Assembly (NCBI GenBank): GCA_965153285.1
Contig: OZ229121.1
Source: Podarcis tiliguerta
Lineage: Eukaryota
Direction: 5' to 3' (one strand)
Length of the DNA stretch: 64,000 nucleotides
Positions within the stretch are counted from its first letter, which is position 1. Every line of letters begins with the position of its first letter. The position numbers and the translations under genes are program-made. The notes under the pieces were generated by a model. The model did no database searches, had not been told where the DNA came from, and saw only the letters and a program-made list of their open reading frames with translations. Below are positions 26,555 to 52,542 of the stretch, one piece after another.

Positions 26555-26740
<186 letters not shown>

Positions 26741-29556: not shown

Positions 29557-29649
<93 letters not shown>

Positions 29650-29805
29650 TTAAAATGCATTGTAATCAATTATCCTTTGATTACTATTTCGATCATGCAA
29701 CACCTTATGATGTGAGATTTAAAAGACACAAGGCCAGAACAAGATGTGTAACTTCAGCACCATCCACATTCTCTAGGCAGAGATAAAGAGATTGTCCTTA
29801 CATCA

Positions 29806-29960
29806 AGTAACACTCTGTGTATATCATTATCTGGCAGAATAGGCAGCGGGTTGTTCATTCTTGAGACCTGTGGGCTTCAGGAACTGCAGTTCTACATTAC
29901 CTGGAAAATGAACAACCCGCTGCCAGTTTTGTCAAAGAATGATATACACACAGAGTTACT
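29806..29960. mobile_element. Short hairpin MITE with ~55-bp inverted arms
   Basis: agtaac..tgtgtatatcatt..ggcagcgggttgttcatt versus aatgaacaacccgctgcc..aatgatatacaca..gttact. Confidence 0.75.
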
Positions 29961-31202: not shown

Positions 31203-31326
31203 GGCTTGGATCCAAACTTTTTCGCTTCACTTTTTGCTTCACAGAAAGAGTTGAGCATACAGAAGAACCGGTCCCATGATTCCAACTCTCCTTCCATTCG
31301 CAGACCCCAAAATTAGGATCCAAGCC
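31203..31326. mobile_element. Harbinger-like MITE
   Basis: Perfect TIR ggcttggatcc / ggatccaagcc. Confidence 0.6.
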
Positions 31327-32198
31327 ATAATATTTAAACAACTAGTTGTTTAAATCATTTTAAACATAAGTAATCATTTTAAATCATAAGTAATCATTTT
31401 AACTTTTCATGTAAAGGTCCACTTCAGACTCCTCCTGCCACTACTCTGAATCAAGATCCTCTATTAAGGTATTCTACACAATTTCCTACTTCTCCCTTAC
31501 CTAAGTATAAAGTGACATACAGGGACCACAGGACTATGATATTAGAATTTAAAATAACCCAAATAAATTCATCTGCTTTTTTCCTGACATTCTGCAGAAT
31601 GTTTTACCCAAATGGATGCTTTTCTTGTACAAACTGGTCATCTTTCCTAACATGACAAGATTAAACCTTTGCACTGAAGTATCAATCGACACATTTCCCA
31701 GAAAGGAAATGAGTGTTAAGGGGTTAATTTCAGCCTTCCCTGTGTATCCCACTTGTGTATTAAAAATCTCCAGCTGCCTACCACAAACACCATTACTAGG
31801 TTTAAATAATTACTTTTGCCTCTTTTGTTCCATATTTGTTGAGGAGATATCATTTTATGGTTTATATCCAAGGTGCAACTAGAGCAAGATGTTTGCAAGC
31901 TGGGGGAAACCCTCTTGCTGTAAATCCAATGCTGGTGATCCATATTCTGCCTAATCTGCCACCATACTCCTTCTGATTCCCTTATTTCCTGCAATGAGGA
32001 GGGGAGATCACAGCTCATCATTATGTGCTGGAGCAAAGGTCAGTCAGGATATGTACAGTAATGTTAAATTCAGACCTGCAGCATTTGGAGTTCTGCTTGT
32101 CTCTTAGACAAAGCACCATTCCTGCTAGCATTCGCTTTATTTTATCAGCTGATCAGTTCCAATGCCCTTCTGAATATCAATACTCCTAACAGTTAATC

Positions 32199-32332
32199 AA
32201 TCATAGAATCACAGACTTCTAGAGTTGGAAGGGACCCACAAGGGTCACCTAGCCCAACCCCCAGCAATGCAGGAATCTTTGCTCCAACATGGGGCTCAAA
32301 TGCACAACCTTGAGATTAAGAGTCTCAAGCTC
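32199..32332 (-). mobile_element. tRNA-Lys-derived SINE with CR1-like tail
   Basis: Colinear with 28169-28285. Confidence 0.8.
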
Positions 32333-34244
32333 AAAACTTGTGCTTTCTCCAGTGGGTTAACATACCACCCCATAGCTCAGGGCCCACTTACCTAAAAACA
32401 ATGGCTACTTTTATTTTAGGGACTAGAATGCAGCTAAATAAGCATTCACTATCCAAATTATCTACTGGGGTGAACCAAAACTGGTTAGAGCCTCCATCTC
32501 GGCCTGTTAGGTAGAAGAGAGAGAGAAAAGGCAGATGGCAGCAAAAGTGTGGGAGCTGGGATGAGATAGAAAGGAAAATCACATCCCAAAACAGTGATAG
32601 TCTAAACTCTACATCGAGTTTATATTCTGTGAATTAGAATTCATTTATTTAAAGTAAGTTTAAGTGAAACATCTACTTGGCAGCCAATTATTTTTTTAAA
32701 TAGACTCCAATAATAAATTGTGTTTTCAGTTACTATAACTGAACATTTTTGCCACAACCAATTATGTGAAAATTTAATTATTTGTCCTTGTATTTCCTGG
32801 CACTAACATCAAAATTGTATTTCACACATCGTATTGGATGCAGCTACTAGCATGTCCAAAGCTTTTAAATCTGATCATTTCTACTGTACCTATATTAACA
32901 GTGCCAGTTTTTCCACATTTTACCCAAGACATTTTTATGATATTGGCCAGACTTATGCTGCTTCTAATACCAAGAGAAAAACATCAAAATTACTGAAGTC
33001 TGCAATAAATTTGTGAGCTGCTTTTGTTACTGTAAAAGCACACTTTCTTCACTTGATTTAGTACCACCAAAATAAAACGAAATTTCTAGATATCCCTCAG
33101 AGCCAGCATATGTGATTTGTCATAAAAAGTCTACTTATCACACATTTCACAGAACTCTGTTGATATAGGTGTAAAATCAACTCAAGCATGTTATTACTTG
33201 CTGTGTAGAACCCACAATCTCTCGCTCACAGTAGTAGGTGCCTGAACTTGTGCGTTAGAGAATGACAAAGCTGTTTATTAAAAACTGATTTTAAGTGTTC
33301 CCTTGGATATGAGCTATATAAAAACAGCAGTTCTACAGTTCATAACAGTCCCTGATAGAGGGTCATATTTCTTCTGGTCTGCAACTTTTTATAATGGAAG
33401 AAATTCTGCTAATGAAACATTGGCCTATACAGTACTGCAAAAGAAACTAAAATGTAGTGCAACAAGTAGAAGAACAATTTATAATTGTTGGATTGTAAAT
33501 GGAGTATATTGGAAAATATTTCTAAACGGCTTTTGTAAGATCTCTAAATTGGTTATCAAGTGTTGAGATTGCTGACTAGATTCAAAGACCATAACCCCAC
33601 CCTAATTTATGTTCTGGACCATATCTTAAGTTACTGCAAGTGACCAGTGAGGTAATATAGGAATCACCCAACACAAGAACAGAACAGAACCCTGCTTGGG
33701 CTACCCTGCAACTATAGTCAGCTACTAGTCCACATTGCCCCCACTATTTTTTGATAAAACACAGTTAAGGAAGACTAGGAATCTGTTTGGAAGAAAAGGG
33801 TAGCTTGTTTATGTAACGCATTAGCAAACAGTGTTTGGTATATTGATTGCTTCATAGTTATGTTCCTTAGCTTCATAATTGATGTAATAGTGGGTATTTT
33901 TTTATTGGCTACTGGCAAATAATAAAACTCTGACAAGTTTACCCTGGAGTCAAATAGAATGGCACTCTAAAGCAAACGGAAGCAAAACTGATGAAATCTG
34001 CTGTGGCTATGTGTCAAACACTTAATAATAATAATAAAGAGTCTTGCACCATGACTGCAGATCTGCTTGTGATTAGCTATCCCTACAGTGTGATGAGATT
34101 TAAGAGCACAGGAAAAGGGGAGCGAGCTAGCTAGCTAGCTAGCTAAATAAATGTCTTGTGAACCATCTCAAGGCATTTGTTGACTATGAATACAAGTTGA
34201 CTATTTGTTGACTATGACCTGAATACCAGTTGGCAGGAATTACA

Positions 34245-34373
34245 ACTTGGGAGAGTGCTATTGCACTCATGTCCTGCTTGTGGGCTTCCCATAGGTATGT
34301 GGTTGGCCACTGTGAGAACAAGATGCTAGACTAGGTGAGCCTTGGCCTGAATCAGGAGGCTTCGTCTTATGTT
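34245..34373 (+). mobile_element. CR1 3' fragment
   Basis: ggttggccactgtgagaacaagatgctagactag...ggcctga...tcttatgtt. Confidence 0.65.
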
Positions 34374-35213
34374 GTCTTTTTGAGACAGGTAAAATAAAGC
34401 CGAATAAAGCTTATAACACCTCTGCCTCTGCAGTGTAATTCACCCAACCGGGCAAGATTCTGAATCAAGTTTTAAGTGCTCGGCAAAGAGGAGCTCACAA
34501 TCCTTAACTAAGAACTGAAACACATTACATCTGCATGATAGGGAGAGAAACTTTACAGAAAGGCTATAAGCTAAACATCCAGCTACTCCTTTTCCATGTG
34601 GGAAAACAATGTATGTGACTGAAAAGGGATGAAAATCATCTTTTCAGAAGGTGAATGCACAGGCTGTCAGGCCAGGAAAAAGAATGATGGAAGCTGTAAA
34701 GACAGAAGTTCACTCTCTCTGCTTCTGGGCCTCACATACTGAGGAGAGCCTTCTCATATCCTTCTTGCTTTCAGGCCCAGGATAAATATGATGAATATTC
34801 ATGCAATCTGGCCAATATGGCTAGGTGGACATGAAACAAGTCCATGAGACTTTTATGCTGGATGCTTACTGTTCTCAGATATGCATATAGACACATGCTC
34901 TAGCTGCCATTGTGCTGGGGCACCTCTGAACTTTTCAGCTATCAGCTTTCTGAGGGTTACATGCCAGTGGTGGATGAGGCCAGAGGCAAAAGAGCAACTA
35001 ATGTACATTTTTATCTGTGTACAGTACCTGCCTGCCCTTGTGGTTCCTTATAAATATACTTGAATATATGGACCTCAGGAAACATCTGCTTCCACATGAG
35101 CCTCTTGAGACTTTTGAGCATTTCAGGTTGCTTTGGCACATGATTTTTAAAGTTCAAAAAGATAACATGAAACAAAACAACCTAGGTTCCCAATTCAAAT
35201 AATTAAAACTTAC

Positions 35214-35384
35214 CAACCAAGACAACAAGTCTGTATTTCTCATTGGGCTGTCGTCTATACTTTGCTACTTCTTCGTAAGTTGGGACATCTGCTGTATCGT
35301 ACTGATCACTCTTCTTGCATTCATACATAGTCTTGTTTGTTTTTCTATCTTTTCTGCTGAGACGGAAACTCCTCCTGAAACCAG
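35214..35384 (-). CDS. MPP7: MPP7 exon, HOOK to GK start ([15 protein letters not shown]...TYEEV...LVVLV)
   Basis: acag|CT ... G|gtaagt, 171 nt, phase 1-1. Confidence 0.97.
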
Positions 35385-38300
35385 CTGTAGTTACGAGATT
35401 TAAAAAAAGAAGCAGAAGCAAGGGTTACTGTCATCAGCCTAGCCAGTAGCCCATCTGTAACAAACACTCCTTCATATGGGCATTTGTTACTTTTGTTACT
35501 TAGTAGTTTTTCTTCCTTATATCTTAAAGGACCAAATTCAAAGTCCAAATTGTTTTCCATACATATTTGATTAGGCTCATGCAAGGGCATATGGGAGCCA
35601 CATGGGGTGAAATTTAACGTCTTTTTAATCTCCATTGTTTTGTGTTTACTTTTGAAGTCCCTCTATGTTTTTAGATAGGATTGTGGCCTAATCACATTAC
35701 CAAATTATTTTTATTCAAAAGGTGCCAATTTCAAAGTGTATGGGTTGCTGGTGAAAATTAGGAATGATGTATTTTTTAAAAAAACAACATCATCATATTG
35801 GTATAGCAGGCTAGATCTCTGTTAAGCACTGAGAACAGAAATATGGGGAAATGTCACATTTGTAATACAGACTTGCAAAATTTGCTGATATCCCTACCCC
35901 CAAAATACTGATAATTACCCAACTCCCAGATACTGATATTTTAATAAGTGCTTGCAGAATCAACAGAAGACACTCATTCTTTATCTAAATACGTTCCCAG
36001 CTGAGATCATATATTTGACATCCATACTGGTTCAAAGAAAGTCAACAACAGCGATGAATGTTTCTAAAAACCTATTAGTCATAGCTGTCAACTTTTCCCT
36101 TTTCTTGCAAGGAATCCTATTCAGAATAAGGGAATTTCCCTTTTAAAAAAGGGAAACGTTGACAGCTATGCCTATTAGTAGCTTCACAGTCTTGAATTAC
36201 ATTAAAAATCCATTTTAATCATTGCAACACCAGTATGCTTTGTTTTGATAACACATACATCATTAAATGGGGCACAAGATAAAATATAATTAAGGGGAGA
36301 AACAGTCAATATATTAGACGACATAGCTCAGCCAGTCTACAGTCGTGTTTGTCACTTGAGTCAGATGTTCTACTCTGAGCAATCCAGGACAGGCTTCTTA
36401 TGATGGGAAATAGATCTCATGCCTCCTTGCCTGCTGAGACAGATCTTCACTGAGTTGTTGCTTGTCCTTACCAAGATCTGCTTGCCTTTTATGTTGCCTA
36501 GAAAAGCCCAACGTATCAGTATGATCACCTTTAATTCAAGCCACTTGATACTTCTTTACGTTTCAATACTTTGCATCCTCTGGTGCACTATTGGTATGAC
36601 CAGAACCTTCATAAACACCACGGGAGCAGCAGTGAGACAAAATGGTAGTGCTCAGAGTCAATAGTGACTGCTTTTAATAGAGCCACCCTGAACTCCCATC
36701 ACAACTGCATCCCAGCATGCTGATCTGCCAGAGAATACAATACTTCTGACGTGCTGCTGTAGATCAGAGCTAGAAATTAAAAGATAACTGAATGCAGGAA
36801 TAATTCTGAATCACTACAGCCAGCCATACACCTGAATAGGCAAAATTTAAAGCTGTGATTGTCAGATGGAGGGTGGTATACAAATTTAATAAACAACAAC
36901 ATCAACAACAACAAATAGAAATGGAAGGAAAATGCAAGGAAAGTCATTAAAAAAACTCATCAGAGTAGATGTTGAAATAAGGGGTGTATGAAGAGATGTC
37001 AGTAATAGTGTTTCTGCCTTTGCACTGAGCACTCCCTTTCCCAAACAACTTGGGAACAATCCTTGATGTGTGCCAGGCAAGAGGAAAAGGTGATGATAAG
37101 AACGATTCTTTGGAAATGTCCCACCCCTGGCAAAACAACAACACTTGAGAACAAGCAGGGAAAAGGTGATGGTGGTGGTGGTAGTAGTAGTAGTAGTAGT
37201 AATACTTATGCACTTGCTCACTCATAAAAAAGAACCAGGAAAAATGTGATAATTATTATCACCATCAATATGAAGCCTCTGCACTGCCCTCACCCAAACA
37301 ACTTTGGAATAATCCCCATTGTAGGGTATGTAGCAGGAACAACGAATGGTTGTCATAACCTTCCCCCACCCCCCAGTATTCTACTGAGGCATCTATCAAG
37401 CAGCCACCCACTCTACATTCCAATAGGCAGCAAACACAAACAAAGCAGCAATGGGTAGGACCCCCAGATTTCCTCTCCCACATTTTCAAAGAGTTTCTGA
37501 AGCAGCTGCTCTATATGGATGGCAGGAAGCAAAGTGAAACAAATAGAGCAGCAACTGGGTGGATCCAAGGACTAGGATATAAGACAGAAGCAGGAAAAGG
37601 GCACTAAAGGGGGACAGCAGCTATTTGGAGCCCCAAGTTTTCCCACTGCCTGGTGCCTCAACAGCTCACTTATCAATCACAGCTCTCACTTCACTCACTG
37701 GCTAATCATTTCACAGAAATTCCTGGTGCTTAGAAGGGTACCTGCACACTTTGATTATAATTTTTTCCTAGGAGGGGTAGAGACATGTACTTTTGAAACA
37801 TAAAAGCTGGAGGCACCAAATAAGGCCTTCACTGGTTTCATGGTGCTTATGGCAGCCTGGTAGCTCCTTCCAATAGTGGAGTCAACTTTGCAAGCTAACC
37901 CTGTTTCCTGCTGGTGGGAGAGGCACTATTCTACAAAAGAATAGCTGCTGCTCAAAAGGCTTAGGCTCCCCTCTAGAAGTACATACCTGAGGGAAAGCAA
38001 AAACTTTCCTCTGTTTTGTTCCACAGATCATCAGTGAAAGGCACTGAAAATTAAGCCAGCTCCTGGGTGCAGAACCCTTTGAATTGATCCCATTTCATGG
38101 TCAAACTAGATTGTAACAAATTAGCAAACACTGAACAGGACTTCCCACCCCCCAAATGCTAATCCCCTCTTCCTGGTCAGGTTAAAGTGTTAGACTATTC
38201 CAAGTGCAATCAACCACTTTAGAAATGCTACACACTGAACATGTTCCTAGCAACTAGCTGTAGAAACAAAAGGGAGCAACACCCCCTCTTCTGGCAATGG

Positions 38301-39859
38301 CTCACACCATTCTTCTCGGAGACTAAAACCGGTATTTATATTGAGTTTATAGAGTTTTTAAGTATGTTGATAAATAGCTATTTAAATAGTTTTCTCCAAA
38401 AGGGTGAAACCAATTATTGTTTTTAATAGTATGCAAACAGTTTACTACCAACAAAATAGTTTAACTACATGGTTTGAACCATTAAACTACATGAAAATTA
38501 GTTCAACTTCTGTCCTTCACTGCTGCCCATTTAATACCAATCACTGTTTTTTCAAAATTGTATGCACTTTTTTCTCTATATACATTGAAGGCAACCCTTT
38601 GCCTTCAATGTATATAGAGAAAAAGACAAGCCATTGTTTCCAATAAGTATCAACAGCAAACATCTCACAAAAAGTAGGTATCATTTAGACATAAATGGTA
38701 AAGCCCTGCCCACAGGCTCACAATCTACAATGATATACATGCTTGTGTGTCAAATTTAATACAGTTTGACAGACATTATAGACAAATAGCAAGTTCTCTG
38801 TTAAACCAGCACCATATCATTGACTAGCACAGTAAAAACATAGTTAATTATTTCTGGACAACTCTAGTCTGCAGGAAGTTCATTTCTGAGGCCACCTTAT
38901 AACAGTACACCCAATTCCTGACATATGACTAGGGCTTTTAAATAGTTTTTATTCTGTATGTCTGACACCACTGTGGTTTCCCATTATGAATCCCAGAAAT
39001 AACATTTCATGAAAACCGAATGAAGCTATAACACTTCCACCCTGTATCCATAGTTAAGAAACTGGGAGTGACCCAATGGTCTCCCCTTCTTCCTCCAACT
39101 TTCCAGCAAAAGTTTCCTTCCAAGCCTTAGCTTAGAGTGCATCTGCATTGGCACTCACAAGGTTCCCTTCTAAACTAACGCTTGCTAACCTGCTTCAGAT
39201 CCTGGTTGGAACAATGGAGATCAGTGAACATACTGGGCCAAGAGTGATACCAAACTGAACAGGCTGACTGCAGATACCTCAGGGTATGTAAGTATCACCT
39301 ACATGGAGGCTCATAGAGCCCTGCTGGTAGAGGTATGTAGGAGGAAGGCAAAGGTAGTGATGGAGTCCCCCCCCCCATTACCAATGAATTCTGGCATACC
39401 TCTACACATCCCATGAACTACTCAGAATAATCTTATGATAACTACCTAGTTCCTTGATCTGAAACTTATTGTTATGCAATTTTTTTCTGTATGACAAAAG
39501 GTGCGAGTTAAGGTTGATAATCCATCATACTCAATTCTACTAAGTTAAAGAAAACATATATTTCAACTGAAGAGATCAACTAGCAAGGTCTGGCATTAAA
39601 GTTGCTAATTTGAATAGTGCCATCAGTGGTACTGCTATTATTTATCAGTCTCCCAACAGCAGTTCCCTGAGTGATGTCAATGATCAAAAACTATTTAAAC
39701 AAAACAAGAAATCATTAAAGAGAATAAAACAACTATAAAATAGAGACCACAAGATTAGAAATCACAGCAATAATCAGAGAGAGCTCCCAAAATAAATTTC
39801 ACAGAACTAAAATGACCATGCTAAAATCACAGCAGCATGCAAAGATTAAATAATTTAGA

Positions 39860-40095
39860 AATACAAACTATTTTAAAATGCCTGGGAAAATGAATAAGAA
39901 AAGTTATTTGCCTGGCACCAGGAAGGCATTAAAATGTGTGTCAGGTGGGCCTCTCTGGCATTCCACACCTCAGTTTGCAGGGGTACTCAGAGAAGAGTTT
40001 CAGATGATTATTTCAAGGCACAGATAAATGTAAGTGGGAAGAAAATATCATTCAGCTACTGAGGTCCCAAATCATAAAGGGCTTTAACAGTGAAA
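39860..40095 (-). mobile_element. Degenerate L2 LINE 3' fragment
   Basis: aaatgcctggg...tttgcctggcacc...caggtgggcctctctgg...ggtcccaaatcataaagggcttta motifs. Confidence 0.45.
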
Positions 40096-41126
40096 GCTAT
40101 TCTGTTTCGATTGGTAGGCCTCCTGTGGCATGCAAATATCAGGCATACAGATTTAGTGCACAGCTTCTAAAATCTATCTGGAAGCATGGTGACACACAAA
40201 CCTCTCTACCAGTCTACCCATTTGCAGTGCCACCTTCCCCTTTAATAAAACATGTGACATTGATATATTAATAAATTATGTAGCATGCCCTCAATTAGTC
40301 TCCACCTACTCTTGTGCTGCTGATTTACCCTGAGTAGTTCCTGCATCACCATGATCTCAACCTCCTTCTCTATTCTACCCCATTTTATGCCCCAATATGG
40401 GCCAATTCTTACCAATAATTTGTGTCCTCTTCCCACATCCCTTCCTTGAAGAATAAAGAAAAGCTGATATGGTATGTTCAACTTACAATGGTTCTTGTGT
40501 AGCATCTTCTAAGGAATTACCAGTAAACCACTTCAAGAATAGGTGAGCAAAGATGAGCCAGTCCGTGGTATCATTACTTGGCTCATTGACAAGAAAGTAA
40601 TCCCAGCCATCCAACAGTACCAACTTAATTCCCTGTAAGTCAGCAGTAGCCAACGTGGTACCCTCTAGATGTTATGGAGCCACCAACTCAAGTCAGAGTG
40701 GCCAATGGTCAGGGATGATGAAAATTGTAGCCCACAACATGTGTCAGGTACCACAATGGCTATCCCTACGCTAAGTCACGAGATTACAACTTTCACCATT
40801 CCTACCAGCTTATTCAATGATAAGGGTTGATGGGAGTTGTAGTTCAATATCATCTGGGACCCAAGATTGAAGAACACTGTGATAGAAAAATAATGTAGTC
40901 AGAAGGAATATAGCCAGCCTAGCATTTTGTCTAGGACAAGTATTTAAATTTCTTTGCAAATTCTACCCAAGTAAATTATTTCCTCATATTCAAGGTAGCA
41001 TTTCAATGCATTCTATATTTCAATGTTAGTAACATATGTTGCGGTTAGGATGCAGATCCTTTGTGTCAAATCCAGTGAGCCATTTTTTAATCTAGCAGAT
41101 TCATTGCATGCAGTGATGCCCATTAC

Positions 41127-41156
41127 CTGCAAACTCTGTAGCCATCCAGGAAAAAG
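41127..41156 (-). CDS. MPP7: Putative MPP7 alternative 30-nt exon or alternative donor ((A/S)FSWMATEFA)
   Basis: ctctctttctttctcag|CT...CAG|gtaatg, phase 1-1, no stop; only 39 nt from the 42-nt exon. Confidence 0.4.
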
Positions 41157-41195
41157 CTGAGAAAGAAAGAGAGTCTTTTGTAAGCAACTGCTCAC

Positions 41196-41237
41196 CTATG
41201 TGGGCTCCACTGTTGTGACCAGCACATTCAGCTTCCT
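41196..41237 (-). CDS. MPP7: MPP7 alternative HOOK microexon, 42 nt (EEAECAGHNSGAHI-A)
   Basis: cttcatccag|AG...ATAG|gtgagc, phase 1-1; parallels MPP3 ETCDCEGYLKGHYVA immediately before G(L/F)RRS. Confidence 0.8.
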   Translation of the reverse strand, partial: RKLNVLVTTVEPT

Positions 41238-41731
41238 CTGGATGAAGTGTAAAAGCGTACAGAACAAAAGCCAAGAAATAAAGCAGAATAGTTAGATGCC
41301 CAGCCATGAATGCAAAAGAAGAGTTACTTAAAAATGACAACTGCAGAAAGCACAGCATAAAAAGCCTTCAATATGCTACTGCTTAAAAATAAATCACTGT
41401 GTTGTTCTGAAGTTGAGCAAGAGATTTTGGAGTACAGCAACATGCATATTTAACTTTTCACTGTTTTATTGCCTTATTCATGACAGAAAATAAAGAAGTG
41501 ATTTTAAAAGGTGTTCTACTTTATATTTTAATGTAGGATAAAAAATACAACAGCTGAAACACAAAGGTAAAGAAATCTACAAAGAATATCAGGAGTTTTT
41601 CTATTTGGCTCAATGGATCAGACAGAAAGGGTATTTTTAATGAATATAACTTCTTAGGTATAAAATAGTATTGGTGCCTATTTAATATACCAAATGTCTA
41701 ACAAAATACTTTACAGCTTTTGGGTATATAC

Positions 41732-41732
<1 letters not shown>

Positions 41733-41771
<39 letters not shown>
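41733..41771. repeat. (GATA)n microsatellite
   Basis: Seen directly. Confidence 0.95.
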
Positions 41772-42493
41772 GGTAGATAACCTATCTAAAGAAATCAATG
41801 AGCTACAACTGTTTAAATGTATGCTGCAAGTAAAAAGTCCCCTAAAGATTGACACAGCAGTAAAGCATCTGTCAAGCTGTGTTCCAATATTGCACCCCTA
41901 ATGACTGGAAAAGATCCACTTTATTCAGTGTCAAAGTTTGAATTTAAGAAAGATAATCTATTAGAGCCATGCAATAGGACTGACATCATCTTTAGCTCCA
42001 TGGAAATGTCTTGTGTTAACATATCTGCTTTGTTCAGTTATGTTACTTTGCTAACATTCAGAGGTTTTAGCACACATTCACTCCTGTTCTGCATACTTGA
42101 CCCATGTGCAGAAACAGGCAGATCTGTTGTGTTGGGCCCCCAAAATGCCTGCTATGTGAGGAGAAGGAAAAATACAAAAGAAGAAACCACATCTGACAAT
42201 GGGATAACACATGTGGATCCCTGTGCCTTACCCCACAGGAATCTTCATGCACACATGCCAGTACTGTGCTGTAGGAACTACGTGCAGAAAGCAACAGGTT
42301 CACAGTCTTCTGCTACCACGATTCTCAGGACTGGAACAACAATTCCAGCAACAACAAAGCAACTGGCTGCTATGACTACATATACTGCTATCTATACGGA
42401 TTATTTTCTAATTGCCTCTAAGTCAGTGATGACCTAGAATACTTAGTTTTTAAGCCATCACTTGCAGCCCAGCAGGGAAACTTGTACATGTAC

Positions 42494-42505
42494 CTTTAAT
42501 TTCCT
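42494..42505 (-). CDS. MPP7: MPP7 alternative HOOK microexon, 12 nt (EEIK)
   Basis: tttttcccccttttgcgcttctcag|AGGAAATTAAAG|gtacat, phase 1-1; parallels MPP4 EELS. Confidence 0.7.
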
Positions 42506-42601
42506 CTGAGAAGCGCAAAAGGGGGAAAAATAGGATGCAAAGTGATTACATGGACTGAAGACATAATGGAAGAATAAAAGGGGGGGGGGTAAAACACCTA
42601 C

Positions 42602-42622
42602 CACACTCAACTGTTTCCTCAG
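42602..42622 (-). CDS. MPP7: MPP7 alternative HOOK microexon, 21 nt (SEETVEC)
   Basis: gtcttttggctgttctaag|CTGAGGAAACAGTTGAGTGTG|gtaggt, phase 1-1; parallels MPP4 DEETFES. Confidence 0.78.
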
Positions 42623-43066
42623 CTTAGAACAGCCAAAAGACAAGCAGACATGATTTACATTATATTCAGCACATAATAAAATGGGAAAAACAGAGCTGAG
42701 TGATATAAAGAACAGGTTAAGAGCATATTTTGCAGAAGTATGATGCACGGCACGTTCAACATTTTGCTGCAAAAGCCTGTACCCCAATTTCTTTTATGGG
42801 AGTAGGAAATGACAAAACCTCACTTTCAAAATGTGTAAGGTTTTTTGGTGTGTATGCAAAGGCTATATTCCCCTAACACTGTTTAAGAGACAGAAAGGTT
42901 TGCACCAGCCCTGGGATGAAAAAACAACACATTAACTAGTCATGTTCTGCTTAGCATCATAAGTAAGTCACTGGGTTTTCAATTGTAATTTTGAAATGGT
43001 TACACTCTTAAGTCGAAGTTAAGTTGTCTACAGGTTGTTGCTTTCATCCAGAGACTTCCTCTAGCC

Positions 43067-43262
43067 CAGAGCTTTCTAAACTTTTCATATTGGTGACACT
43101 CTTTTTAGACATGCATCATTTTGTGACGTAGTAATTCAGTTTTACTAGCAAACCAGAGGTTAAACTAACCCCCTATAAGAGCACAGGGAGTGTTTGTGTG
43201 ACACACCTACACACTGCAGCTTACACACTAATGTGTCGTGGCACACGGTTTGGAAAGCTCTG
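43067..43262. mobile_element. hAT-type MITE, directly followed by a second short MITE to ~43410
   Basis: TIR cagagctttctaaac / gtttggaaagctctg. Confidence 0.75.
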
Positions 43263-45498
43263 TCTGAGCCCGGAATGAGGGAACCTGAGGTTCTCCAGAT
43301 GTTGCTGGACTCTGATTCCCATCAGCCCTAGCCAGCATGGCTAATGGTCATGAAGAATGGGAGCTGTAGTTCAGTGACATATGGGGGCGACAGGCTCCCC
43401 ACCCCTGCCCTAGTTTATTAGACACATCCCAAAGACAACTTACAATGCAGTAGAACAAACTTTCTTTGGGCTCATTTCTCTGCCTGCTTGCCCATCAAAG
43501 TCTCCCCTCCCACCAAAGACACTTCTGCTAGTACCACTTTTATTGCTCCTTGATCAAGCATCATTACTTTACTGATGAAATGTCATACTATGGTACAGAT
43601 ATCAGGGCACAACACACATGCATATCAGTTTTAAAGGGCACATGCATGTAGTTATTCAGATTCTTGTCCCTTTACAATACAAGGAAGTCACAATCACAAA
43701 GGAAGGACAGGACACCTACTTGAATGCGTTCTTAAGAGGCAAAGGACTAATAATAGTTCTTTACAAATGATACAATGTATTATGAGAGACTTGCTCTTAC
43801 AGAGCAATACCATTATCTTCTCAGCCAAGAAAGCCCAAGATCTGCCAAATCCACACACTTTGGATTGCGCTGTTAAGAAAGAATTAAATTATAAGAACTT
43901 GAACTTGATAAGCCCCTGCTAAATTTGTCATAGCCCGCCTTCTTTGAACCCAGGAAGAGCTTAGTTGCTTAGCTGAGAAAGAAATGAAGAAGAGGACAAA
44001 TGCTTACTGGGGAAGAAAAGCCTCCTTCAGAATTTATTTTTTCAATGAGGATAAATTTTCCCACCTGAACTGTTAAGGGTGTTGCATTTATGAAGTGAGC
44101 AGTGTGTGAGATCTGTTAACACAAAACTTGGCCAGATCATTACCATGAAAGCCCCTTGCATTCACAAGGAGAGACAAGATTTCCACTGGCATGCTTGGAC
44201 CCCTTTGGAGGCTACATCAACAGGAAAGCTTCCTGCATGGAGCACAATCCATGAAGTTGCATAATTATTAGTCACTGATGCGGGTACCTGCTACTTTGAT
44301 GTGAACCAAAGTATCCAACATTTCAGTTCCATAACGTAGCCTACTTATATTTGGCATGAATTATAAATACTGTTAGCCATCTCAGTTCTTAGATATCAAG
44401 CCCTTATACAGCTAAAACAGCACAAAATGGAGATTGGGGGGGGGGCATTATGGAAGGAAATAGCCAAGAAACTACAAAACAGCACACTGAAGACTGAGCA
44501 TGCTCAATGAGCAATATTATGTTAATGAATATTCAGTCACTTTCTATTGAAAATCTCAAAGCAACTTGACAAGATTAAAATAAACAGTAGATTTTAAAAC
44601 AATATACAATACAAAATTACTAAAATGTGACTGAAACAAAATCTTGGCTGACTGGGGGTGGAGGAAAAAAGGCTGTGTACATGTGTGTACTGAACAGGAG
44701 CATGCCACACTACAAATGATAATAATTGTGGTTCCACTTTCTTATATATTTTTCTAAGATGGAAAGGCAAGTTTGGTTAGAATGGATAAAGAAAAAATTA
44801 AGCACGCAAAAGAAATATGGTTGTAAGATGCACAGAAAGGAAACTGACAAAAGAACTGGGCTGAAGAAGTAACACAAATTAATTGAAAGTAAATTGGAAC
44901 ACAACTGATGATTGATCTCAAGGATCTGTTTCATTATCAGTTGAACATGCAACTGCTTTGCGACAAGGTTCTAAATGTTTGCCATTTGCTATGCACAACA
45001 GATGCATAACTCTATCCAGTATATTTGGGGGAAAGCAGGAGTCATTCAGTTCAGTCACTTGCCTGCATCACAATGCACAGCAGCCCCATTTTATAAATGA
45101 GCATCAATTGACAAACTATCATAAGCAGGATCACTAAGATTTTCGTGAACGTATGAAAATCTTAAGGTATAAAATTGAATTTCCAAGCTATACCGAAAAT
45201 ATTTAACAAAATTTGTACGTAAAAAGATTTGCGTGAGAAAGTATAAAAACAAAAAATGCTAATGTATTTTTTTAAGTGGATAACTTTTAGGCAAAAATAC
45301 TGAAATTCATCAAATGCACTCTTTGGTTTGATGAGACAGCAAACTGCAAAGATGAAGCCTGTGTTAATGCCGTCACCACAGCAGCAAGTGACCCAAGACA
45401 AGATGACACTGACTTTATATAATTTAGGACTGCAAATAGTCATAAAAAGTGAGGTCAAAGTCTGCTGTCCTTGCAATAGTAGAGAATATTAGAGGAAG

Positions 45499-45863
45499 TA
45501 AAGGTAAAGGTAAAGGTACCCCTGCCCGTACGGGCCAGTCTTGACAGACTCTAGGGTTGTGCGCCCATCTCACTTAAGAGGCCGGGGGCCAGCGCTGTCC
45601 GAAGACACTTCCAGGTCACGTGGCCAGCGTGACATCGCTGCTCTGGCGAGCCAGAGCCGCACACGGAAACGCCATTTACCTTCCCGCTAGTAAGCGGTCC
45701 CTATTTATCTACTTGCACCCAGGGGTGCTTTCGAACTGCTAGGTTGGCAGGCGCTGGGACCGAACAGCGGGAGCGCACCCCGCCGCGGGGATTCGAACCG
45801 CCGACCTTTCGATCGGCAAGCCCTAGGCACTGAGGCTTTAACCCACAGCGCCACCCGCGTCCC
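45499..45863 (-). mobile_element. Full-length young Sauria SINE
   Basis: 5' GGGACGCGGGTGGCGCTGTGG (A box), GGTTCGAATCCC (B box), 3' (ACCTTT)n tail, perfect 10-bp TSD TTAGAGGAAG (45489-98 / 45865-74), CpGs intact. Confidence 0.95.
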
Positions 45864-47464
45864 TTTAGAGGAAGACTCCTCACTAAATGTCAGGAAGAAT
45901 ACTAGGTTTGAAAGAAGAGTGAAGATGTGTTTGGCTTGCTGACAAAACAGATAGTGTTATAAGGAGTTACAGTGTAGAATTTGACAAAATGAGTTTTGCT
46001 TTCAGTATTTGGGCGCCACATAAAAATTTGAATTGTGCACAATTAATTCTCAAAATTATAAAATAGGTTGCATCTTGCTTGAATGCACACCATACTAAAT
46101 CACATGATATTGATATTGAACTATATAAATATATTTGACAGTGATTAAATATTTCTTCTCTCACACTTAGTGAAAATTTTAAAAAGTATATAATTCAGTT
46201 TATATTTAATATCAAAATTACTATTTTATTTTGGTTACACACTTAACCAGGTCTTTCAGAGATTAACCACCCCGTCCATTACACAATGCTAATTATGGAT
46301 TAACAATATTAAATTATTATTAGTCATATGAATGAGAACACATGTGATACAGCTTAAATATAAAAGCAAACTACCATGGTAAAAATCATGGTTCTGTTGG
46401 ATAGAAGGTGTTTTGGCCAGTATTAGTCTAACTGATTTTAATTACTGATGGTTCATGCTCTCTTTTGAAGACATATTACATCAAATGAATGATAAGTTTA
46501 AGGACACGTGCATAAGTTACACCATATAACAAATGTCACCAATTTCATGCAAATGTAGTCCAGTGCTATCCTATGTCAGAAATAGAGCTAGTTCACAAAT
46601 ATAAATGACTGCTTCTCCATGCTCCTGACCTGCAACACACACACATAATTCCATGCAACCATTTTATATTAATTTTCCAAAACCTCACAGAAAGTGGCTC
46701 ATTAGCTTGCTGTCCAACTTCAAGTACACCAATAAAATGATTTGGTTTAGAGTAATGTTACTGTCTTTGTTCTATAGAAGAATGAACTACTGTGTTTTTT
46801 TAAAAACTAGAACTCTGAAACCTTCAAACATGCTATTTTTAGTCCATGATGAGAGATACTGTGCTTTCACATCATTTGCTTTTGATATAATTCTAATTAG
46901 GCACACAGAAAAAGTACTTGCTAGAATATTCTTGCTACATTTTAAAACATATGCCTTATATATGCCACTTCTTAGAAGTCCAATTCAGTTCTAATAAGAA
47001 AAGCAGACAGAAAATTTGATAAGCATATGAGTGGTAATAGATCATATATCAGCCTGATATTTATTGATATGTTCTAAAAACATACTCCAAAGCAGCTTCA
47101 CACAACCTCCAGATATTGTTGGACTATGCTTCAAAAGTAGATGGTTGAGCCTGAAAAAAAGCACTGGCTTCACATGTGTCCCCTTTGTGTACTATTTAAA
47201 TACCCAGTGAGTCATTAAGAATGCCCTTCCAATAATTAGAGATTGGCATATTTATTATTTTATTCACTGTAGGGAATAGGTTTTGCATAAGTATTGATGT
47301 CGGAAGCGGGGGTAAGCCATTTTCTTTAACGAAAATCCCATTTCTACAGCATCACAGGTTTGGGCCTGCTGATATATCTGAAGATACCAGTGCCATATCT
47401 TAAAAAGAGCTGATACAAGCCATATTTGTGTGAACAAAGGAGTATGATTTTTAAACAGACTTAC

Positions 47465-47529
47465 ATGATTTTCTATTGGAAACTTTCAAGGGCTGAACCT
47501 GTACATCTGATCTTCTTAGTGCAAGCCTC
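47465..47529 (-). CDS. MPP7: MPP7 exon, HOOK start (RLALRRSDVQVQPLKVSNRKS)
   Basis: atag|G ... T|gtaagt, 65 nt, phase 2-1. Confidence 0.96.
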
Positions 47530-48028
47530 CTATAAAATGATTTGGGGGAAGGGGGAAGGGAAGAGAAGCAAAACTCTTTATAATTTTCATAGCTATTTTG
47601 AGATTAACACTCCATATCAGTCTTTTCCAAAGTATCCTGATTTTTAGAAGACATATTCCTAAACAATACAGTCTACTCACAAGTCTATGAAATTAAATCC
47701 TAGAAGGGTTTTTTATGTTCTCCAAACACAGCTGCAGTTGTTATTCATGCATAGTACATCAATAAAGATACCAAAGTACTATTTTCCATATGTTTTTCCT
47801 TTCCAAGGTGGATCACAAATATTCTATACGGTTTTGTCATTATTAATGTGAATAGACAAATAAAGAAAACCAAACTACTTGGACAACAACTTACAAAGTT
47901 CAGACATTTTACCATAGGACAAAACTTGAAGGTTTATTGACCTTATAATCCATAAGTGCAGGCATAACAATTATATCAAAGATATACTGATCACATTTTA
48001 AGTATCAGAGAAATCAGAAACTGCTCAC

Positions 48029-48225
48029 CTTTCTTGGAAATGCTTTGAAGGAATTAAGCCTGCCCTGGGATTGGCATTACCTTCAAGCTTGGCTTGCCAC
48101 CAAGTTGCATCATCCTGGCTCATGATCTGAAGAATATCACCTTTTCGGAAAGGAAGTCCAGCTTCTTTACAGGGAATTGCTTTATCCTCACTGGGATCAT
48201 AGTCAAACAGAGCTTTCATGAAGAT
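48029..48225 (-). CDS. MPP7: MPP7 exon, SH3 domain ([11 protein letters not shown]...WWQA...[11 protein letters not shown])
   Basis: ccag|ATC ... AG|gtgagc, 197 nt, phase 0-2. Confidence 0.98.
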
Positions 48226-48414
48226 CTGGAAGAAGGCGGCCTTATTTGTAATTAAATGTCTTATTACAACCCCCAGTCTCCGTTTTTATTGCTTATTGGC
48301 ATACAAACAACATGTGTAAAAATACAATTGTAAAACACATTTACATATGGGTACAAAATATATTTCAGCCAGCAATCTCAGTAAGTCCCTTTTTCTGAGT
48401 AAAGGACCTCTTAC

Positions 48415-48489
48415 CTTTCCTTCTTTAGATGCAGTTTCTTCTTTGATACTGGGTATAATTTTAAATGTAATGGCTCCTTGCGACTGGGA
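48415..48489 (-). CDS. MPP7: MPP7 exon, PDZ end ([13 protein letters not shown]...KEGK)
   Basis: ttag|TCC ... AAG|gtaaga, 75 nt. Confidence 0.97.
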
Positions 48490-48979
48490 CTAAAAGGATG
48501 TGAAAAACAAATTATTAAAGCATTCAGTACAAGTTAAAGAAAAACAATAAGGAAGGTAGAGCTAATGTAACTTGTAGTGCTAGTTAACTTGATGTGATTA
48601 ACCTCTTAGTACCTCTTTATAATAGGCTGTGCTACGATATTCTCTTCTGTCCTAAAAAACAGACAAGTTCTGATAATTTATACAAAAGTTTGTTAAGAGT
48701 GTTTACAATCAAGTGGTGTATAAATTGTTATGGATTTTAAAAAACAAAACCATAAAATAAAGAAGTAAATAGCCTCTCTTGTTCTATCAAAGAGTTAATG
48801 AACCAAGAAATAAAGGATATAAAAATAACCAATAAGGCCAAGTCAGGCAGGAGGAAAAAACTGAGGACTGTGCCTGCCTCCCAGAGTTCTTTGCTCCTCC
48901 CTCCATCATGCGCCACCATTGTAACGCAACCCATTAAGCTCATCATCAACTGCCTTAAATTATTCCATTTGTAACCTAC

Positions 48980-49065
48980 CAGAATTTGTATAATTTCTTC
49001 TGGTTTTTTATCATCTACAGGAATTCCATTAACTTCCTTAAGTTCATCGCCAACATGAATGAGAC
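48980..49065 (-). CDS. MPP7: MPP7 exon, PDZ ([14 protein letters not shown]...IIQIL)
   Basis: acag|GT ... CTG|gtaggt, 86 nt, phase 1-0. Confidence 0.97.
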
Positions 49066-49658
49066 CTGTGGAGCATATTTATTGAATAACCATTTTAAAG
49101 TTCAATACAATTGTGCATATCTAATGTTGTTTCAAGTCATGGTCATTCCTACTCCGCAAAGCACAACAGATTTCTACTTCTCTTCTACCAAAATGCAATT
49201 TTATAGCAAAGTCTTTCTGTCTCTCTCTCTTTGGGAAGGCAAAAGAGAATTGTGTTTGTAGTTGTTTATTTTAATATTACTATAGTTTTGTTGTAATGTG
49301 ATTGTTTTTAATCTTTCTGCCCAGAGAATCTTTGTTACAGAAGAGAATATAAATGCTTAGTGCACAGAAGTGCTCAACTGTGAAACTGCGATACAGAGAG
49401 GCTGATTTGATACCTTCCTTCTTGCTGAGTTTCTAAATGTATTTCACTAATGAGATAATTTTCAAACTGCTAAATTGCATCCATAATACCAAAATCCTAT
49501 CAGAGATCCTATCACAATAATCTAACATAATATACATGGCAGAAACCACAAAAAGGTTTCTGGATGCAATTACCTACTTTTACCAAGCAATTTAGAATTC
49601 ATTTGAAGCACTAGGCTGGCCATCACATCCCAGCAATCACACTTTTAAACATTCTTAC

Positions 49659-49740
49659 CACTTCTATCTGCAGCACCTCCACGCATTATTCGAGCCACAA
49701 CAACAGCTCCAGTCTGTTCATCCCTTTTAATAGTAGCTCC
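49659..49740 (-). CDS. MPP7: MPP7 exon, PDZ ([27 protein letters not shown])
   Basis: aaag|GGA ... G|gtaaga, 82 nt, phase 0-1. Confidence 0.97.
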
Positions 49741-50599
49741 CTTTAAAAATAAATTGAAACATTATTATGATTTAATGCTGGGCTACACTGAACAGTTTTC
49801 TACCAGCAACCTTTCAGTAACTTGAGGAAGGTAACTATATTTGAGATTCCTGTCTTTACAAATGAAGCTATCAGGACCCCTCTATTCTCTGGGTGTTAAA
49901 AGTATTTGTGAGGTGTTCGAGTACTGAACAATGAAAACCTTAACACTACATATAGAAGACGGCAAGAGGCCAGATTTTGTTTTTGTTTTAAAAGACTACA
50001 TTCAGAGGAGTTTTCCACATCTCCCACATTATCTGTGCTTAAAAGAACATCCCACTTTAGAACACAGTAATTACTATTTGGCCTAAGGCATCTTGGGGAA
50101 TCTTGGATAGTTTCACCAAGCAAAATTAAGTGACCTGAAAACCATTCTACATTTCAGTACTGCTTTGGAAAACACATGGTGAAGGATTCAGTGTTTTTAA
50201 AAAGTGGAATATTTCTTACATTACGGTAACTGTTTTTACAATTATAAAACAGGTACAAGACAAGTGCAGCAGCATGAACAAAGACATATGTAGGAGATGG
50301 CTGGTGTGGAAGCCTACAGGAATGAGTTACTACTTTCATTCACACTACAAATTACCACCACCAAGCTTTCCCTGCAGTGATTTGTGGCAACAGAGATGGG
50401 TTGAAATGGAAACTGAACTTTGAAATCTAAATCTGATCAGATCTTCTATCAGCCCAGAGAGCCAGTAAGCCAGGGGTGGGGGATATCAGGTTCAGAGACC
50501 CAATGCAGCCCTCCAGGCCTCCCTATATATCCTTCTGAACTCTTCCCAGGTCACACCTCTCTCCCCAGACCATATACCTAACCAGCCTTGCTGAAGTGC

Positions 50600-51270
50600 T
50601 TTCCCCTAGCTGCTGGAATATATCTCTGAACTGCAATAATTTCTACTGCCTGGTGGTCATTCTTCCTCTGGTCACTGCTGTGCATACACAACCTGACTGC
50701 CTGTCTCCAGGCACTGCAGTTGTCTGCAAGGGATTCCCACACAAAATTGCCAGCCTTCATGTCACATTTGCAGACATCTTTATATGGCAGAGCTGATTTG
50801 CCAATGGACCTGGTGCCTGAAGCCAGCTCCCCATAAAGCACATCCTTGGGAGCCTGCCATCTTCCATTCTGTGGTCATGACCAAGCCAGGGTTGATATCA
50901 CTGAGAGAGAAGTGTGAACATAATGGGAATTGGGGCCTGGAAGAGTACATCTTTGTTTGAGATTCTTTCCTGCCATGTGATGTCCAAAATCATTCTGATG
51001 CAGCGTATTTGGAAAGTGTGGAGGCATCGCTCCTGGAAGGGTATAAGTTGACCACAACTCACTTCGATAAAGCAGCATGTAAGCATGGTCAATCTTAATC
51101 TTGGTATTAGCCATTGCATTACATTTTCCCATACCCTTCTGGAGAGGCAAGCCAATGCCGTAGCTGCCTTACCAATATGTCTGTTCAGCTCAGTGTCAAT
51201 GAAAAGGTTGCTGGTCATAATGGAGCACAAATTTTGTGCACCACTCATATTTATTAGCACCTCATCAATT
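50600..51270 (-). mobile_element. RTE-clade LINE fragment (frameshifted RT C-terminus)
   Basis: Overlapping ORF pieces ELNRHIGKAA, RCIRMILDITWQERISN and LYGELASGTR are typical of RTE ORF C-termini. Confidence 0.85.
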
Positions 51271-51460
51271 TCCTACATTTCCTACCCCATTCCAAGAGAC
51301 ACTCATAGCCTTTCCTCCAACATGCAGAAATGTTATTTCAAAGTCCCCCTTATTAGTGTATAATTTGTGCACAACTGTGCAATGACACCGGCTCATATTT
51401 TTGAGTGTCAGGTATGATTTTATTGTTATTTGGGTTGTTGTTGTTTTTAAAAAAACTTAC

Positions 51461-51592
51461 CAGTGGTTCTCTATTTTTCACTAGCCTGATTATTTTCACA
51501 GAGTCTTCATCATCATCAATATCATCAGGCATGGGAGGTAGCACTGGGTCGTAGTTCTTTTGGGCAACAGTATCATGCACAGAAAGCAAAGC
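51461..51592 (-). CDS. MPP7: MPP7 exon, L27C end to PDZ start ([12 protein letters not shown]...[13 protein letters not shown])
   Basis: tcag|GCT ... CTG|gtaagt, 132 nt. Confidence 0.98.
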
Positions 51593-52408
51593 CTGAAAAA
51601 AAAATCATATAAAAAAACCCCCAATTCACAATTGGACCTTGATAAAATGGAAGTTTACCACTTATGCAGTCTTGCTATTACTATTGCAGGGCTCACATCT
51701 GACCATTTGTCTGGTGCTACGTTCTTGTCTCAGCCTATGGACAGTACTTTCTTTCTTAACTGGAAGTGTGAACAGTACAGTAGTGAAGTACTTGTCTGCT
51801 TAAGTTACTACTGGAGTAAGCTACACCAATTTGAAAAGAAAGTGGAAGCACACCCTGAAACTGTTTGAACATAGCAAGGAGAGAGCAAAATAATATTTGT
51901 TACATCTTGTCCTTCATTTGGTTTGGAGGACACCTTTTATTAAAGCTGGCAAAACTATAATGCAATTGTAAATTCCTTAGGCATGAATAAAGAGGAAGTT
52001 ATCCCATGCAAGCTGAAGTCTTTAATCTTTTCATTTTCTTTCCATGAACAAAGACTGTGTGTACCTTACAACTTGTCTTTACATCAGAGGATGCTATTGG
52101 AAAATCTTCTACATTTCCAGTAAGATCATATTCACACAGGCAGCTCTGGAAAAGTTATTTTGTTTTAGCTGCAATTCTATGTGTATGATTCATTAATATA
52201 AACATGTTCCATATTTAGAACTTTAAAGGAGGTATGATTCAAATTCCTATACTACCTAAATATAAATATTGATGTTCAACTAAATTCTTAGACATGATCT
52301 AGCTGGAGATGAGTACTTGCCATGTCTAGATGTGGTACAATATTTTTCAGATTAAAGCACTGATCATTTATCATTTCACAATGCATAGTTCTGTAAAGAA
52401 GAATAATG

Positions 52409-52542
52409 CAGTTGGTAGAGCATGAGACTCTTAATCTCATGGTAATAGGTTCAAGCCCCACTTTTGGGCAAAGGATTCCAGCACTGCAGGGGGTTGGAAT
52501 AGAAGACCCTTATTGTCCCTTCCAAACTCTACAATTCTCTGA
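52409..52542 (+). mobile_element. tRNA-Lys-derived SINE with CR1-like tail
   Basis: cagttggtagagcatgagactcttaatctc..ggttcaagcccc + gtcccttccaaactctacaattct. Confidence 0.8.

What the first reader, a model, noticed from the sequence alone, without database searches (positions are those of the whole stretch)
41196..42622. Hidden three-microexon cassette (21+12+42 nt) in the MPP7 HOOK region
Seen: three phase 1-1 exons with polypyrimidine tracts and GT-AG borders at 42602-42622, 42494-42505 and 41196-41237. Joined, they turn NRKS-S-GFRR into NRKS-SEETVECEEIKEEAECAGHNSGAHIA-GFRR (+25 aa, acidic, two Cys). Known, from recall: canonical human MPP7 (576 aa) lacks this insert, while paralogues have similar ones at the same position (MPP4 DEETFES/EELS/..FFIA-GFRRS; MPP3 YDQPCDK/ETCDCEGYLKGHYVA-GLRRS). 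Inference: this is an ancestral MPP3/4/7 microexon module retained in reptile MPP7. It places an acidic patch beside the basic HOOK segment and could tune SH3-GK conformation or partner and membrane binding. ORF-based annotation would miss it; predicted non-mammalian isoforms may already include part of it.
Basis: partly seen in the sequence, partly recalled or inferred. Interest (0 to 1): 0.85.

Follow-up and report, generated by a model that had tools for sequence, protein, structure and literature searches.

The report
Known MPP7 HOOK-region microexon cassette
The three tiny exons are real and very old alternative exons in the linker of the scaffold protein MPP7. Two of them are already in public gene models for this lizard and all three in models across vertebrates, so the finding is ordinary apart from an unannotated 12-base exon.

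Summary
On the minus strand, 42622-42602 (21 nt), 42505-42494 (12 nt) and 41237-41196 (42 nt) are AG/GT-bounded, open, phase 1-1 exons between the last SH3-side exon and the HOOK/GK exon of MPP7.

Splice signals alone prove nothing: the intron holds 440 chance look-alikes. The encoded peptides settle it.
- The 597-aa Podarcis muralis and P. raffonei isoforms read exactly exon A + 21-nt exon + 42-nt exon + exon B.
- Isoforms with all three exons (about 600 aa) are annotated in mammals, birds, turtles, a crocodile, frogs, a gecko, a lungfish, a paddlefish and a shark.
- MPP3 carries homologous segments.

It is neither hidden nor a reptile retention.

What is new:
- The 12-nt exon is intact here but absent from the lacertid models I saw.
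It lies 39 nt after the 42-nt exon, so the two are probably mutually exclusive.
- The 12- and 42-nt exons give TAG if joined directly to exon A.

The MPP4 comparison is untested, and function is inferred only.

The parts
47465..47529 (-). Constitutive exon A (end of the SH3 side, ..RLALRRSDVQVQPLKVSNRKS + T); leaves phase 1
   Evidence: tblastn of P0104
42602..42622 (-). 21-nt microexon (S-EETVEC-), phase 1-1. It starts with CT, so it is compatible with exon A. It ends in G.
   Evidence: Identical peptide in the Podarcis 597-aa isoforms P0104 and P0239. Conserved as YEETVEC from shark to mammals.
42494..42505 (-). 12-nt microexon (E-EIK-). It starts with AG, which gives TAG directly after exon A's T. 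It is intact here but absent from the lacertid models seen.
   Evidence: Pattern hit once against 0 in 100 shuffles. Orthologous EEIK/EEIE in mammals, birds, turtles, frogs and the gecko isoform P0244.
41196..41237 (-). 42-nt microexon (E-EAECAGHNSGAHI-A). It starts with AG, so TAG after exon A unless a G-ending microexon precedes it.
   Evidence: Identical in P0104 and P0239. Homologous to the MPP3 segment EDCDCEGYFNGQYIA.
41157..41195 (-). 39-nt spacer between the donor of the 42-nt exon and the acceptor of the 30-nt exon. It is too short to be spliced out as an intron.
   Evidence: Counted. Models carry either the 21+42-nt exons or the 30-nt exon alone.
41127..41156 (-). Fourth microexon, 30 nt (S-FSWMATEFA-A), phase 1-1. 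It starts with CT, so it can follow exon A directly.
   Evidence: It is the HOOK insert of the 586/584-aa isoforms of Podarcis muralis, P. raffonei, Zootoca vivipara and Lacerta agilis.
35214..35384 (-). Constitutive exon B ([19 protein letters not shown]...YRLVVLV): basic HOOK motif and the start of the GK side

Best explanation
The interval holds the alternatively spliced microexon cassette of the HOOK linker of MPP7, the segment between the SH3 and guanylate-kinase domains, in a wall lizard (Podarcis, most likely P. muralis).

Shown:
- All the exons are symmetrical (phase 1-1), so frame is kept in any combination. Models across vertebrates show skip, 21, 21+12, 21+42, 21+12+42 and, outside squamates, a shortened 39-nt form alone.
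- In this sequence the 12- and 42-nt exons begin with AG and exon A ends in T. They therefore read through only behind an exon that ends in G (the 21-nt or 12-nt exon).
- A 30-nt lacertid exon sits 39 nt downstream of the 42-nt exon.

Inferred:
- The 30-nt and 42-nt exons are mutually exclusive, because 39 nt is too short for an intron.
- The full insert carries 8 Glu and 1 Lys, about -7 net. It lies immediately before the basic stretch [15 protein letters not shown], about +7 net. MPP-family HOOK/D5 segments bind FERM/4.1 proteins. Inclusion most likely masks or weakens the basic HOOK motif electrostatically and lengthens the linker. That would tune partner or membrane binding and the SH3-GK arrangement in a tissue-specific way.
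For: Sequence and frames.

Identity with annotated isoforms:
- P0104 (P. muralis, 597 aa) and P0239 (P. raffonei) read NRKS-SEETVEC-EEAECAGHNSGAHIA-GFRR.
- The window protein matches P. muralis best.

Breadth among the retrieved MPP7 models:

| HOOK form | Models |
|---|---|
| all three exons | 52 |
| 21+42 nt | 34 |
| 21+12 nt | 6 |
| 39-nt form alone | 43 |
| 30-nt exon | 10 |
| skip | 25 |

- The taxa run from sharks to mammals.

Transcript-level support elsewhere: P0101 (586 aa, all three exons) and P0091 come from Logan contigs of 5.8 and 2.6 kb. These can only be spliced mRNA.

Gecko isoform P0244 has all three exons.

The insert lies between SH3 (232-295) and GK (389-581).

The mouse Mpp7 21-nt 'NEURAL-UP' microexon is listed in PMC8395343, table S2.

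HOOK/D5 as the FERM-binding segment of MPPs: PMC7662862.
Against: - There is no RNA evidence from this genome.
- The 12-nt exon is absent from every lacertid, iguanian, snake and cordylid model I saw, and its donor (gtacat) is weak.
- The functional part rests on charge arithmetic and on family knowledge. The AlphaFold model was poor overall (mean pLDDT 56.8). It only shows residues 282-376 below pLDDT 50, which does not discriminate.
- I found no paper that tests these isoforms.
Confidence: 0.9

Rival explanations
1. The 12-nt exon is a relic in lacertids. It is still recognisable but no longer spliced in, and only the 21-, 42- and 30-nt exons are used.
For: It is not present in any model of Podarcis muralis, P. 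raffonei, P. lilfordi, Zootoca, Lacerta agilis, Anolis, Pogona, Phrynocephalus, Crotalus or Hemicordylus that came back. Its donor is gtacat.
Against: - The AG, the GT, the frame and the peptide EEIK are all intact. An unused 12-mer in an intron should not survive the long separation from geckos, birds and mammals.
- A gecko model uses the exon (P0244).
- Exons of 12 nt are commonly missed by read aligners and model builders (general knowledge).
Confidence: 0.25
2. The cassette mainly serves dosage control. Combinations that place the 12- or 42-nt exon directly after exon A create TAG and send the mRNA to nonsense-mediated decay, so the protein insert is secondary.
Against: - The insert peptides are conserved at the amino-acid level from shark to mammals and in MPP3. 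That argues for selection on the protein.
- Other vertebrates use a downstream acceptor that gives an in-frame 39-nt form (SY-AECAG.., 43 models).
- In this window an AAG 6 nt into the 42-nt exon would likewise give an in-frame 36-nt form (read; use not shown).
Confidence: 0.1
3. The three stretches are chance AG..GT open mini-frames with no biological meaning.
For: There are 440 such candidates in the same intron, 9 of them with decent signals.
Against: The peptides are identical to annotated isoforms of the same genus, and they are conserved across vertebrates. The pattern test gave 0 hits in 100 shuffles.
Confidence: 0.01

Closest known systems
Annotated MPP7 isoforms with the HOOK insert (e.g. 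Podarcis muralis XP_028607220 / UniProt A0A670J7G2, 597 aa; mouse XP_017173497 and XP_006526392; 600-601-aa 'isoform X1/X2' models in birds, turtles, frogs and mammals)
   Same: Same gene, same position between NRKS and GFRR, and the same exon peptides. The 21- and 42-nt exons of the window are letter-for-letter those of the Podarcis models.
   Different: The lacertid models seen lack the 12-nt exon that is intact in the window. Squamates start the insert with Ser (TCT) where other vertebrates have Tyr.
MPP3 HOOK segment (bird MPP3, P0038 and cluster)
   Same: It has homologous two-part insert segments, a 7-residue block and a 15-residue E-D-x-D-C-x-G-Y-x-N-G-x-Y-I-A block before GLRRSF. Insert-less forms also exist (P0050, P0078, P0082).
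   Different: It is a paralogue. No counterpart of the 12-nt exon appears in the MPP3 sequences retrieved. The 7-residue block is only loosely similar.
Mouse Mpp7 21-nt microexon listed as NEURAL-UP and 'not annotated' (PMC8395343, table S2)
   Same: Same gene and the same 21-nt length as the first exon. Mouse isoforms X5/X6 contain EETVEC.
   Different: I could not check that the mouse coordinate is this exon. Tissue regulation in the lizard is untested.
Alternative HOOK-region inserts of other MAGUKs (DLG1/SAP97 inserts I2, I3, I4, I5; the MPP6/PALS2 isoforms), from my own knowledge
   Same: These are short alternative exons in the SH3-GK linker. They change binding to 4.1/FERM proteins and localisation. 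That is the working analogy for function.
   Different: The inserts are unrelated in sequence. DLG1 I3 adds a basic 4.1-binding motif, whereas this cassette adds an acidic patch next to a constitutive basic motif. Nothing here was tested.

Membership tests
MPP7 (MAGUK p55 subfamily member 7) orthologue | L27-L27-PDZ-SH3-HOOK-GK architecture | tested here: met
   Pfam on P0104: L27, PDZ 141-216, SH3 232-295, GK 389-581. The exons of P0104 map to window 58206..24040 on the minus strand.
MPP7 (MAGUK p55 subfamily member 7) orthologue | Near-identity to named MPP7 proteins | tested here: met
   The window translation differs from the P. muralis models essentially only where the alignment runs over exon ends or the alternative HOOK insert, and differs at more positions from the other species compared.
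Annotated MPP7 HOOK microexon cassette | Exons lie between the ..NRKS exon and the GFRRSF exon, are phase 1-1, and encode YEETVEC-like, EEIK/EEIE-like and EDAECAG.NSG.Y[IL]A-like peptides | tested here: met
Annotated MPP7 HOOK microexon cassette | Inclusion seen in RNA of this organism | not testable with these tools
There is indirect support only: models of the same genus contain the 21-, 42- and 30-nt exons.
Annotated MPP7 HOOK microexon cassette | The 12-nt exon is included in lacertid gene models | tested here: not met
   None of the Podarcis, Zootoca or Lacerta models retrieved has it. Among squamates only the gecko models do (P0244-P0246).
Ancestral MPP3/MPP4/MPP7 HOOK module | Homologous insert at the same position in MPP3 | tested here: met
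   P0038 and its cluster align with the 21-nt and 42-nt exon peptides.
Ancestral MPP3/MPP4/MPP7 HOOK module | Homologous insert at the same position in MPP4 | not tested
   No MPP4 sequence came back. The third search found the teleost mpp7b paralogues instead.
SRRM3/4-dependent neural microexons | Length of 27 nt or less, with a UGC motif close upstream of the acceptor | tested here: inconclusive
   Lengths of 21 and 12 nt fit. TGC sits about 12 nt upstream of the 12-nt exon's AG and about 24 nt upstream of the 21-nt exon's AG (read). No statistics were done.
SRRM3/4-dependent neural microexons | Neural-enriched inclusion | not testable with these tools
   The only evidence is a mouse table entry, Mpp7, 21 nt, NEURAL-UP. 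There are no lizard RNA data.

The most novel reading that the evidence does not exclude
Podarcis uses all four microexons under a hard-wired order code:
- the 21-nt exon licenses the 12- and 42-nt exons, which otherwise give TAG;
- the 42- and 30-nt exons exclude each other because only 39 nt separate them;
- the unannotated 12-nt exon is included in neurons or retina.

Together these would give a graded acidic mask, or alternatively a hydrophobic lacertid-specific insert, over the basic FERM-binding HOOK motif.
Probability: 0.35. Interest if true: 0.35.

Novelty: already known. Interest (0 to 1): 0.15.

Why it matters
The result corrects a high-scored lead. The cassette is genuine and conserved for over 400 million years, but it is already in public gene models, including those of this lizard genus.

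Some things remain of modest value:
- The 12-nt exon looks missed in non-gekkotan squamate annotation.
- Lacertids have an extra 30-nt alternative exon.
- The sequence itself imposes simple rules, a TAG gate and a 39-nt spacer, on which combinations are allowed.
- I found no paper on what these HOOK isoforms do, in MPP7 or MPP3. A MAGUK specialist could therefore use the conservation map to design binding tests.

Tried and rejected
- **Splice signals as evidence.** Rejected: the intron holds 440 chance candidates.
- **RNA evidence.**
  - The look-up of sequencing runs with exon B gave no holder on record as RNA, plus one added single-cell RNA run of the same species label that is not indexed.
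  - In the later local comparison I replaced them by N.
- **DNA of other species for intron conservation.** The genome collection on offer is bacterial and archaeal only, so no cross-species intron alignment was made.
- **MPP4.** The third homologue search, with a fish 'MPP7-like' protein, returned the teleost mpp7b paralogues and not MPP4.
- **Structure.** AlphaFold2 on P0104 with 59 aligned sequences gave mean pLDDT 56.8, with the whole 282-376 stretch below 50. This is compatible with a disordered linker, but the model is too poor to support any contact, so I ran no fold search.
- **Joined spliced model.** I searched exon B by reference and natural database proteins by id.
- **Human entry.** One human entry (P0309) appeared in a hit list. 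I left it out of all comparisons.
- **Papers.** Five searches found no study of these isoforms. They found only the mouse microexon table and general MPP reviews.

Full report
**What is in the sequence**

I read the minus strand directly and translated each exon by reference.

| Element | Window coordinates (minus strand) | Length | Boundaries and reading |
|---|---|---|---|
| Exon A | 47529..47465 | 65 nt | ends ..KVSNRKS plus one T (phase 1) |
| 21-nt exon | 42622..42602 | 21 nt | aag acceptor, starts CT, ends G, donor gtaggt |
| 12-nt exon | 42505..42494 | 12 nt | strong pyrimidine tract, cag acceptor, starts AG, ends G, donor gtacat |
| 42-nt exon | 41237..41196 | 42 nt | cag acceptor, starts AG, ends G, donor gtgagc |
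| Exon B | 35384..35214 | 171 nt | starts CT GGT TTC AGG AGG |

- The introns between them are 4842, 96, 1256 and 5811 nt.
Skipping them gives NRKS-S-GFRR.

**Is it more than chance?**

- Not on splice signals. The 12,080-nt intron holds 440 open AG..GT phase 1-1 mini-frames of 9-60 nt. Nine of them have a pyrimidine-rich upstream tract and a near-consensus donor.
- The coding content is decisive.
I searched exon B by reference. I then searched with natural proteins from that result and pulled out the segment between FQER and GFRRSF from every protein returned.

**What the databases already hold**

- P0104 (Podarcis muralis, UniProt A0A670J7G2, RefSeq XP_028607220, 597 aa) and P0239 (P. raffonei isoform X1) read NRKS-SEETVEC-EEAECAGHNSGAHIA-GFRR. 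That is exon A + the 21-nt exon + the 42-nt exon + exon B of the window, residue for residue.
- The window's MPP7 translation matches the P. muralis models best. The remaining differences sit essentially where the alignment runs over exon ends or the alternative HOOK insert. The window is therefore a Podarcis, most likely P. muralis.
- Among the MPP7 models retrieved, with one human entry left out on purpose, the HOOK forms are:

| HOOK form | Models |
|---|---|
| all three exons (25-27 residues, e.g. YEETVEC-EEIK-EDAEYAG.NSGTYIA) | 52 |
| 21+42 nt | 34 |
| 21+12 nt | 6 |
| 21 nt alone (Anolis) | 2 |
| shortened 39-nt form of the third exon alone (SY-AECAG..) | 43 |
| skip (includes 4 Hemicordylus models read as TS) | 25 |

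- The taxa include sharks, gar, paddlefish, lungfish, frogs, turtles, crocodilians, birds, marsupials and placentals.
- Mouse isoforms X5 and X6 (XP_017173497, XP_006526392) contain all three exons.
- Two full-length proteins with the insert come from Logan contigs of 5.8 and 2.6 kb (P0101, P0091). Contigs that short can only be assembled mRNA, so co-inclusion is seen at transcript level in amphibian-like species.
- A mouse islet study lists an Mpp7 21-nt microexon as NEURAL-UP and 'not annotated' (PMC8395343, table S2). I could not verify that its coordinate is this exon, but the length fits.

**The paralogue claim**

- Bird MPP3 (P0038 and its cluster) carries YDQSSDK + EDCDCEGYFNGQYIA before GLRRSF. 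These align with the peptides of the 21- and 42-nt exons. Insert-less MPP3 forms also exist.
- The teleost mpp7b paralogue also ends its insert ..SGIHIA.
- The module is thus ancestral to at least MPP3 and MPP7. It is not something reptiles alone retained.

**What is new relative to the models**

1. *The 12-nt exon.*
   - It is intact in the window: AG, GT, frame and the peptide EEIK, as in mammals.
   - A degenerate pattern for it, including AG and GT, hits the 64-kb window once against none in 100 shuffles.
   - It is missing from every model I saw for Podarcis, Zootoca, Lacerta, Anolis, Pogona, Phrynocephalus, Crotalus and Hemicordylus. Gecko models (Sphaerodactylus X2, P0244) have SEETVEC-EEIE-EEAECAG...
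   - An unused 12-mer should not survive intact in an intron over the divergence from geckos, birds and mammals. I think it is still used and simply missed by model builders, at about 0.7. Without reads this is inference.
   - It lies at 41156..41127 and is 30 nt: tctcag|CT TTT ... GCA G|gtaatg, encoding S-FSWMATEFA-A.
   - It is the only HOOK insert of the 586- and 584-aa isoforms of P. muralis (current X1/X2), P. raffonei, Zootoca vivipara and Lacerta agilis.
   - Only 39 nt separate it from the donor of the 42-nt exon. That is below any workable intron length, so the two should be mutually exclusive. The models agree: they have either 21+42 or 30 alone.
3. *The TAG gate.*
   - Exon A ends in T, and the 12- and 42-nt exons start with AG. 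Either exon directly after exon A therefore makes TAG.
   - The 21-nt and 30-nt exons start with CT and are free of this.
   - The gate is not absolute in other vertebrates. They use an acceptor 3 nt further in and get an in-frame 39-nt form.
   - In the window an AAG 6 nt into the exon would give an in-frame 36-nt form. No model shows its use.

**Where the insert sits and how it may work**

- Pfam places SH3 at 232-295 and GK at 389-581 of P0104. The insert (318-338) lies in the middle of the HOOK linker, directly before [15 protein letters not shown].
- The full insert has 8 Glu and 1 Lys. The basic stretch has 8 Arg/Lys and 1 Asp.
- MPP-family HOOK/D5 segments bind FERM/4.1 proteins through a basic cluster (review PMC7662862).
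- My reading, which is inferred and not shown, is that inclusion adds a flexible acidic mask and extra length next to this basic motif. That would lower or redirect its binding and change the SH3-GK geometry. The hydrophobic 30-nt alternative would do something different.
- AlphaFold2 with a 59-sequence alignment gave a poor model, with mean pLDDT 56.8 and residues 282-376 all below 50. This is compatible with disorder and supports nothing more.

**What could not be done**

- The look-up of sequencing runs found no holder on record as RNA.

**Verdict**

It is wrong on 'hidden' and on 'reptile retention'.
- The feature is already known at the annotation level, and its function is unstudied in the papers I could search.
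- Interest is low. The small residue of interest is the unannotated 12-nt exon, the lacertid 30-nt alternative and the built-in combination rules.

Noticed in passing
window 41127-41156 (minus strand): There is a fourth, 30-nt phase 1-1 microexon encoding FSWMATEFA. It is the HOOK insert of the 586/584-aa isoforms of four lacertid species, and I saw it in no other taxon retrieved. It lies 39 nt downstream of the 42-nt exon.
   Followed up: yes
window 42621-42622 (first two bases of the 21-nt exon): Squamates start the insert with Ser (T+CT), where every other vertebrate MPP7 retrieved has Tyr (YEET/YEEA, loosely like a pYEE-type phosphotyrosine motif). The Tyr, and whatever signalling it may carry, seems lost in squamates.
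   Followed up: no
window 41232-41237: An AAG 6 nt inside the 42-nt exon could act as an alternative acceptor. It would give an in-frame 36-nt form that escapes the TAG gate, by analogy with the 39-nt form annotated in birds, turtles and mammals. No lacertid model shows it.
   Followed up: partly
window 41732-41779: There is an (AGAT)12 microsatellite in the intron between the 12-nt and 42-nt exons.
   Followed up: no
window about 58096-58206 (minus strand), residues 51-52 of MPP7: Lacertid isoform pairs 597/595 and 586/584 differ by a two-residue VK deletion in the first L27 region. This is probably a 6-nt alternative splice-site choice.
   Followed up: no
orthologues P0140, P0148, P0177 (marmot, mole-rat, false killer whale): Some mammalian models extend the third exon by 6 residues (..YIDAVCATA), apparently through a donor 18 nt further on. 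The window has no equivalent reading.
   Followed up: no
window 24040-58206 (minus strand): MPP7 residues 45-597 span only about 34 kb in this lizard.
   Followed up: no
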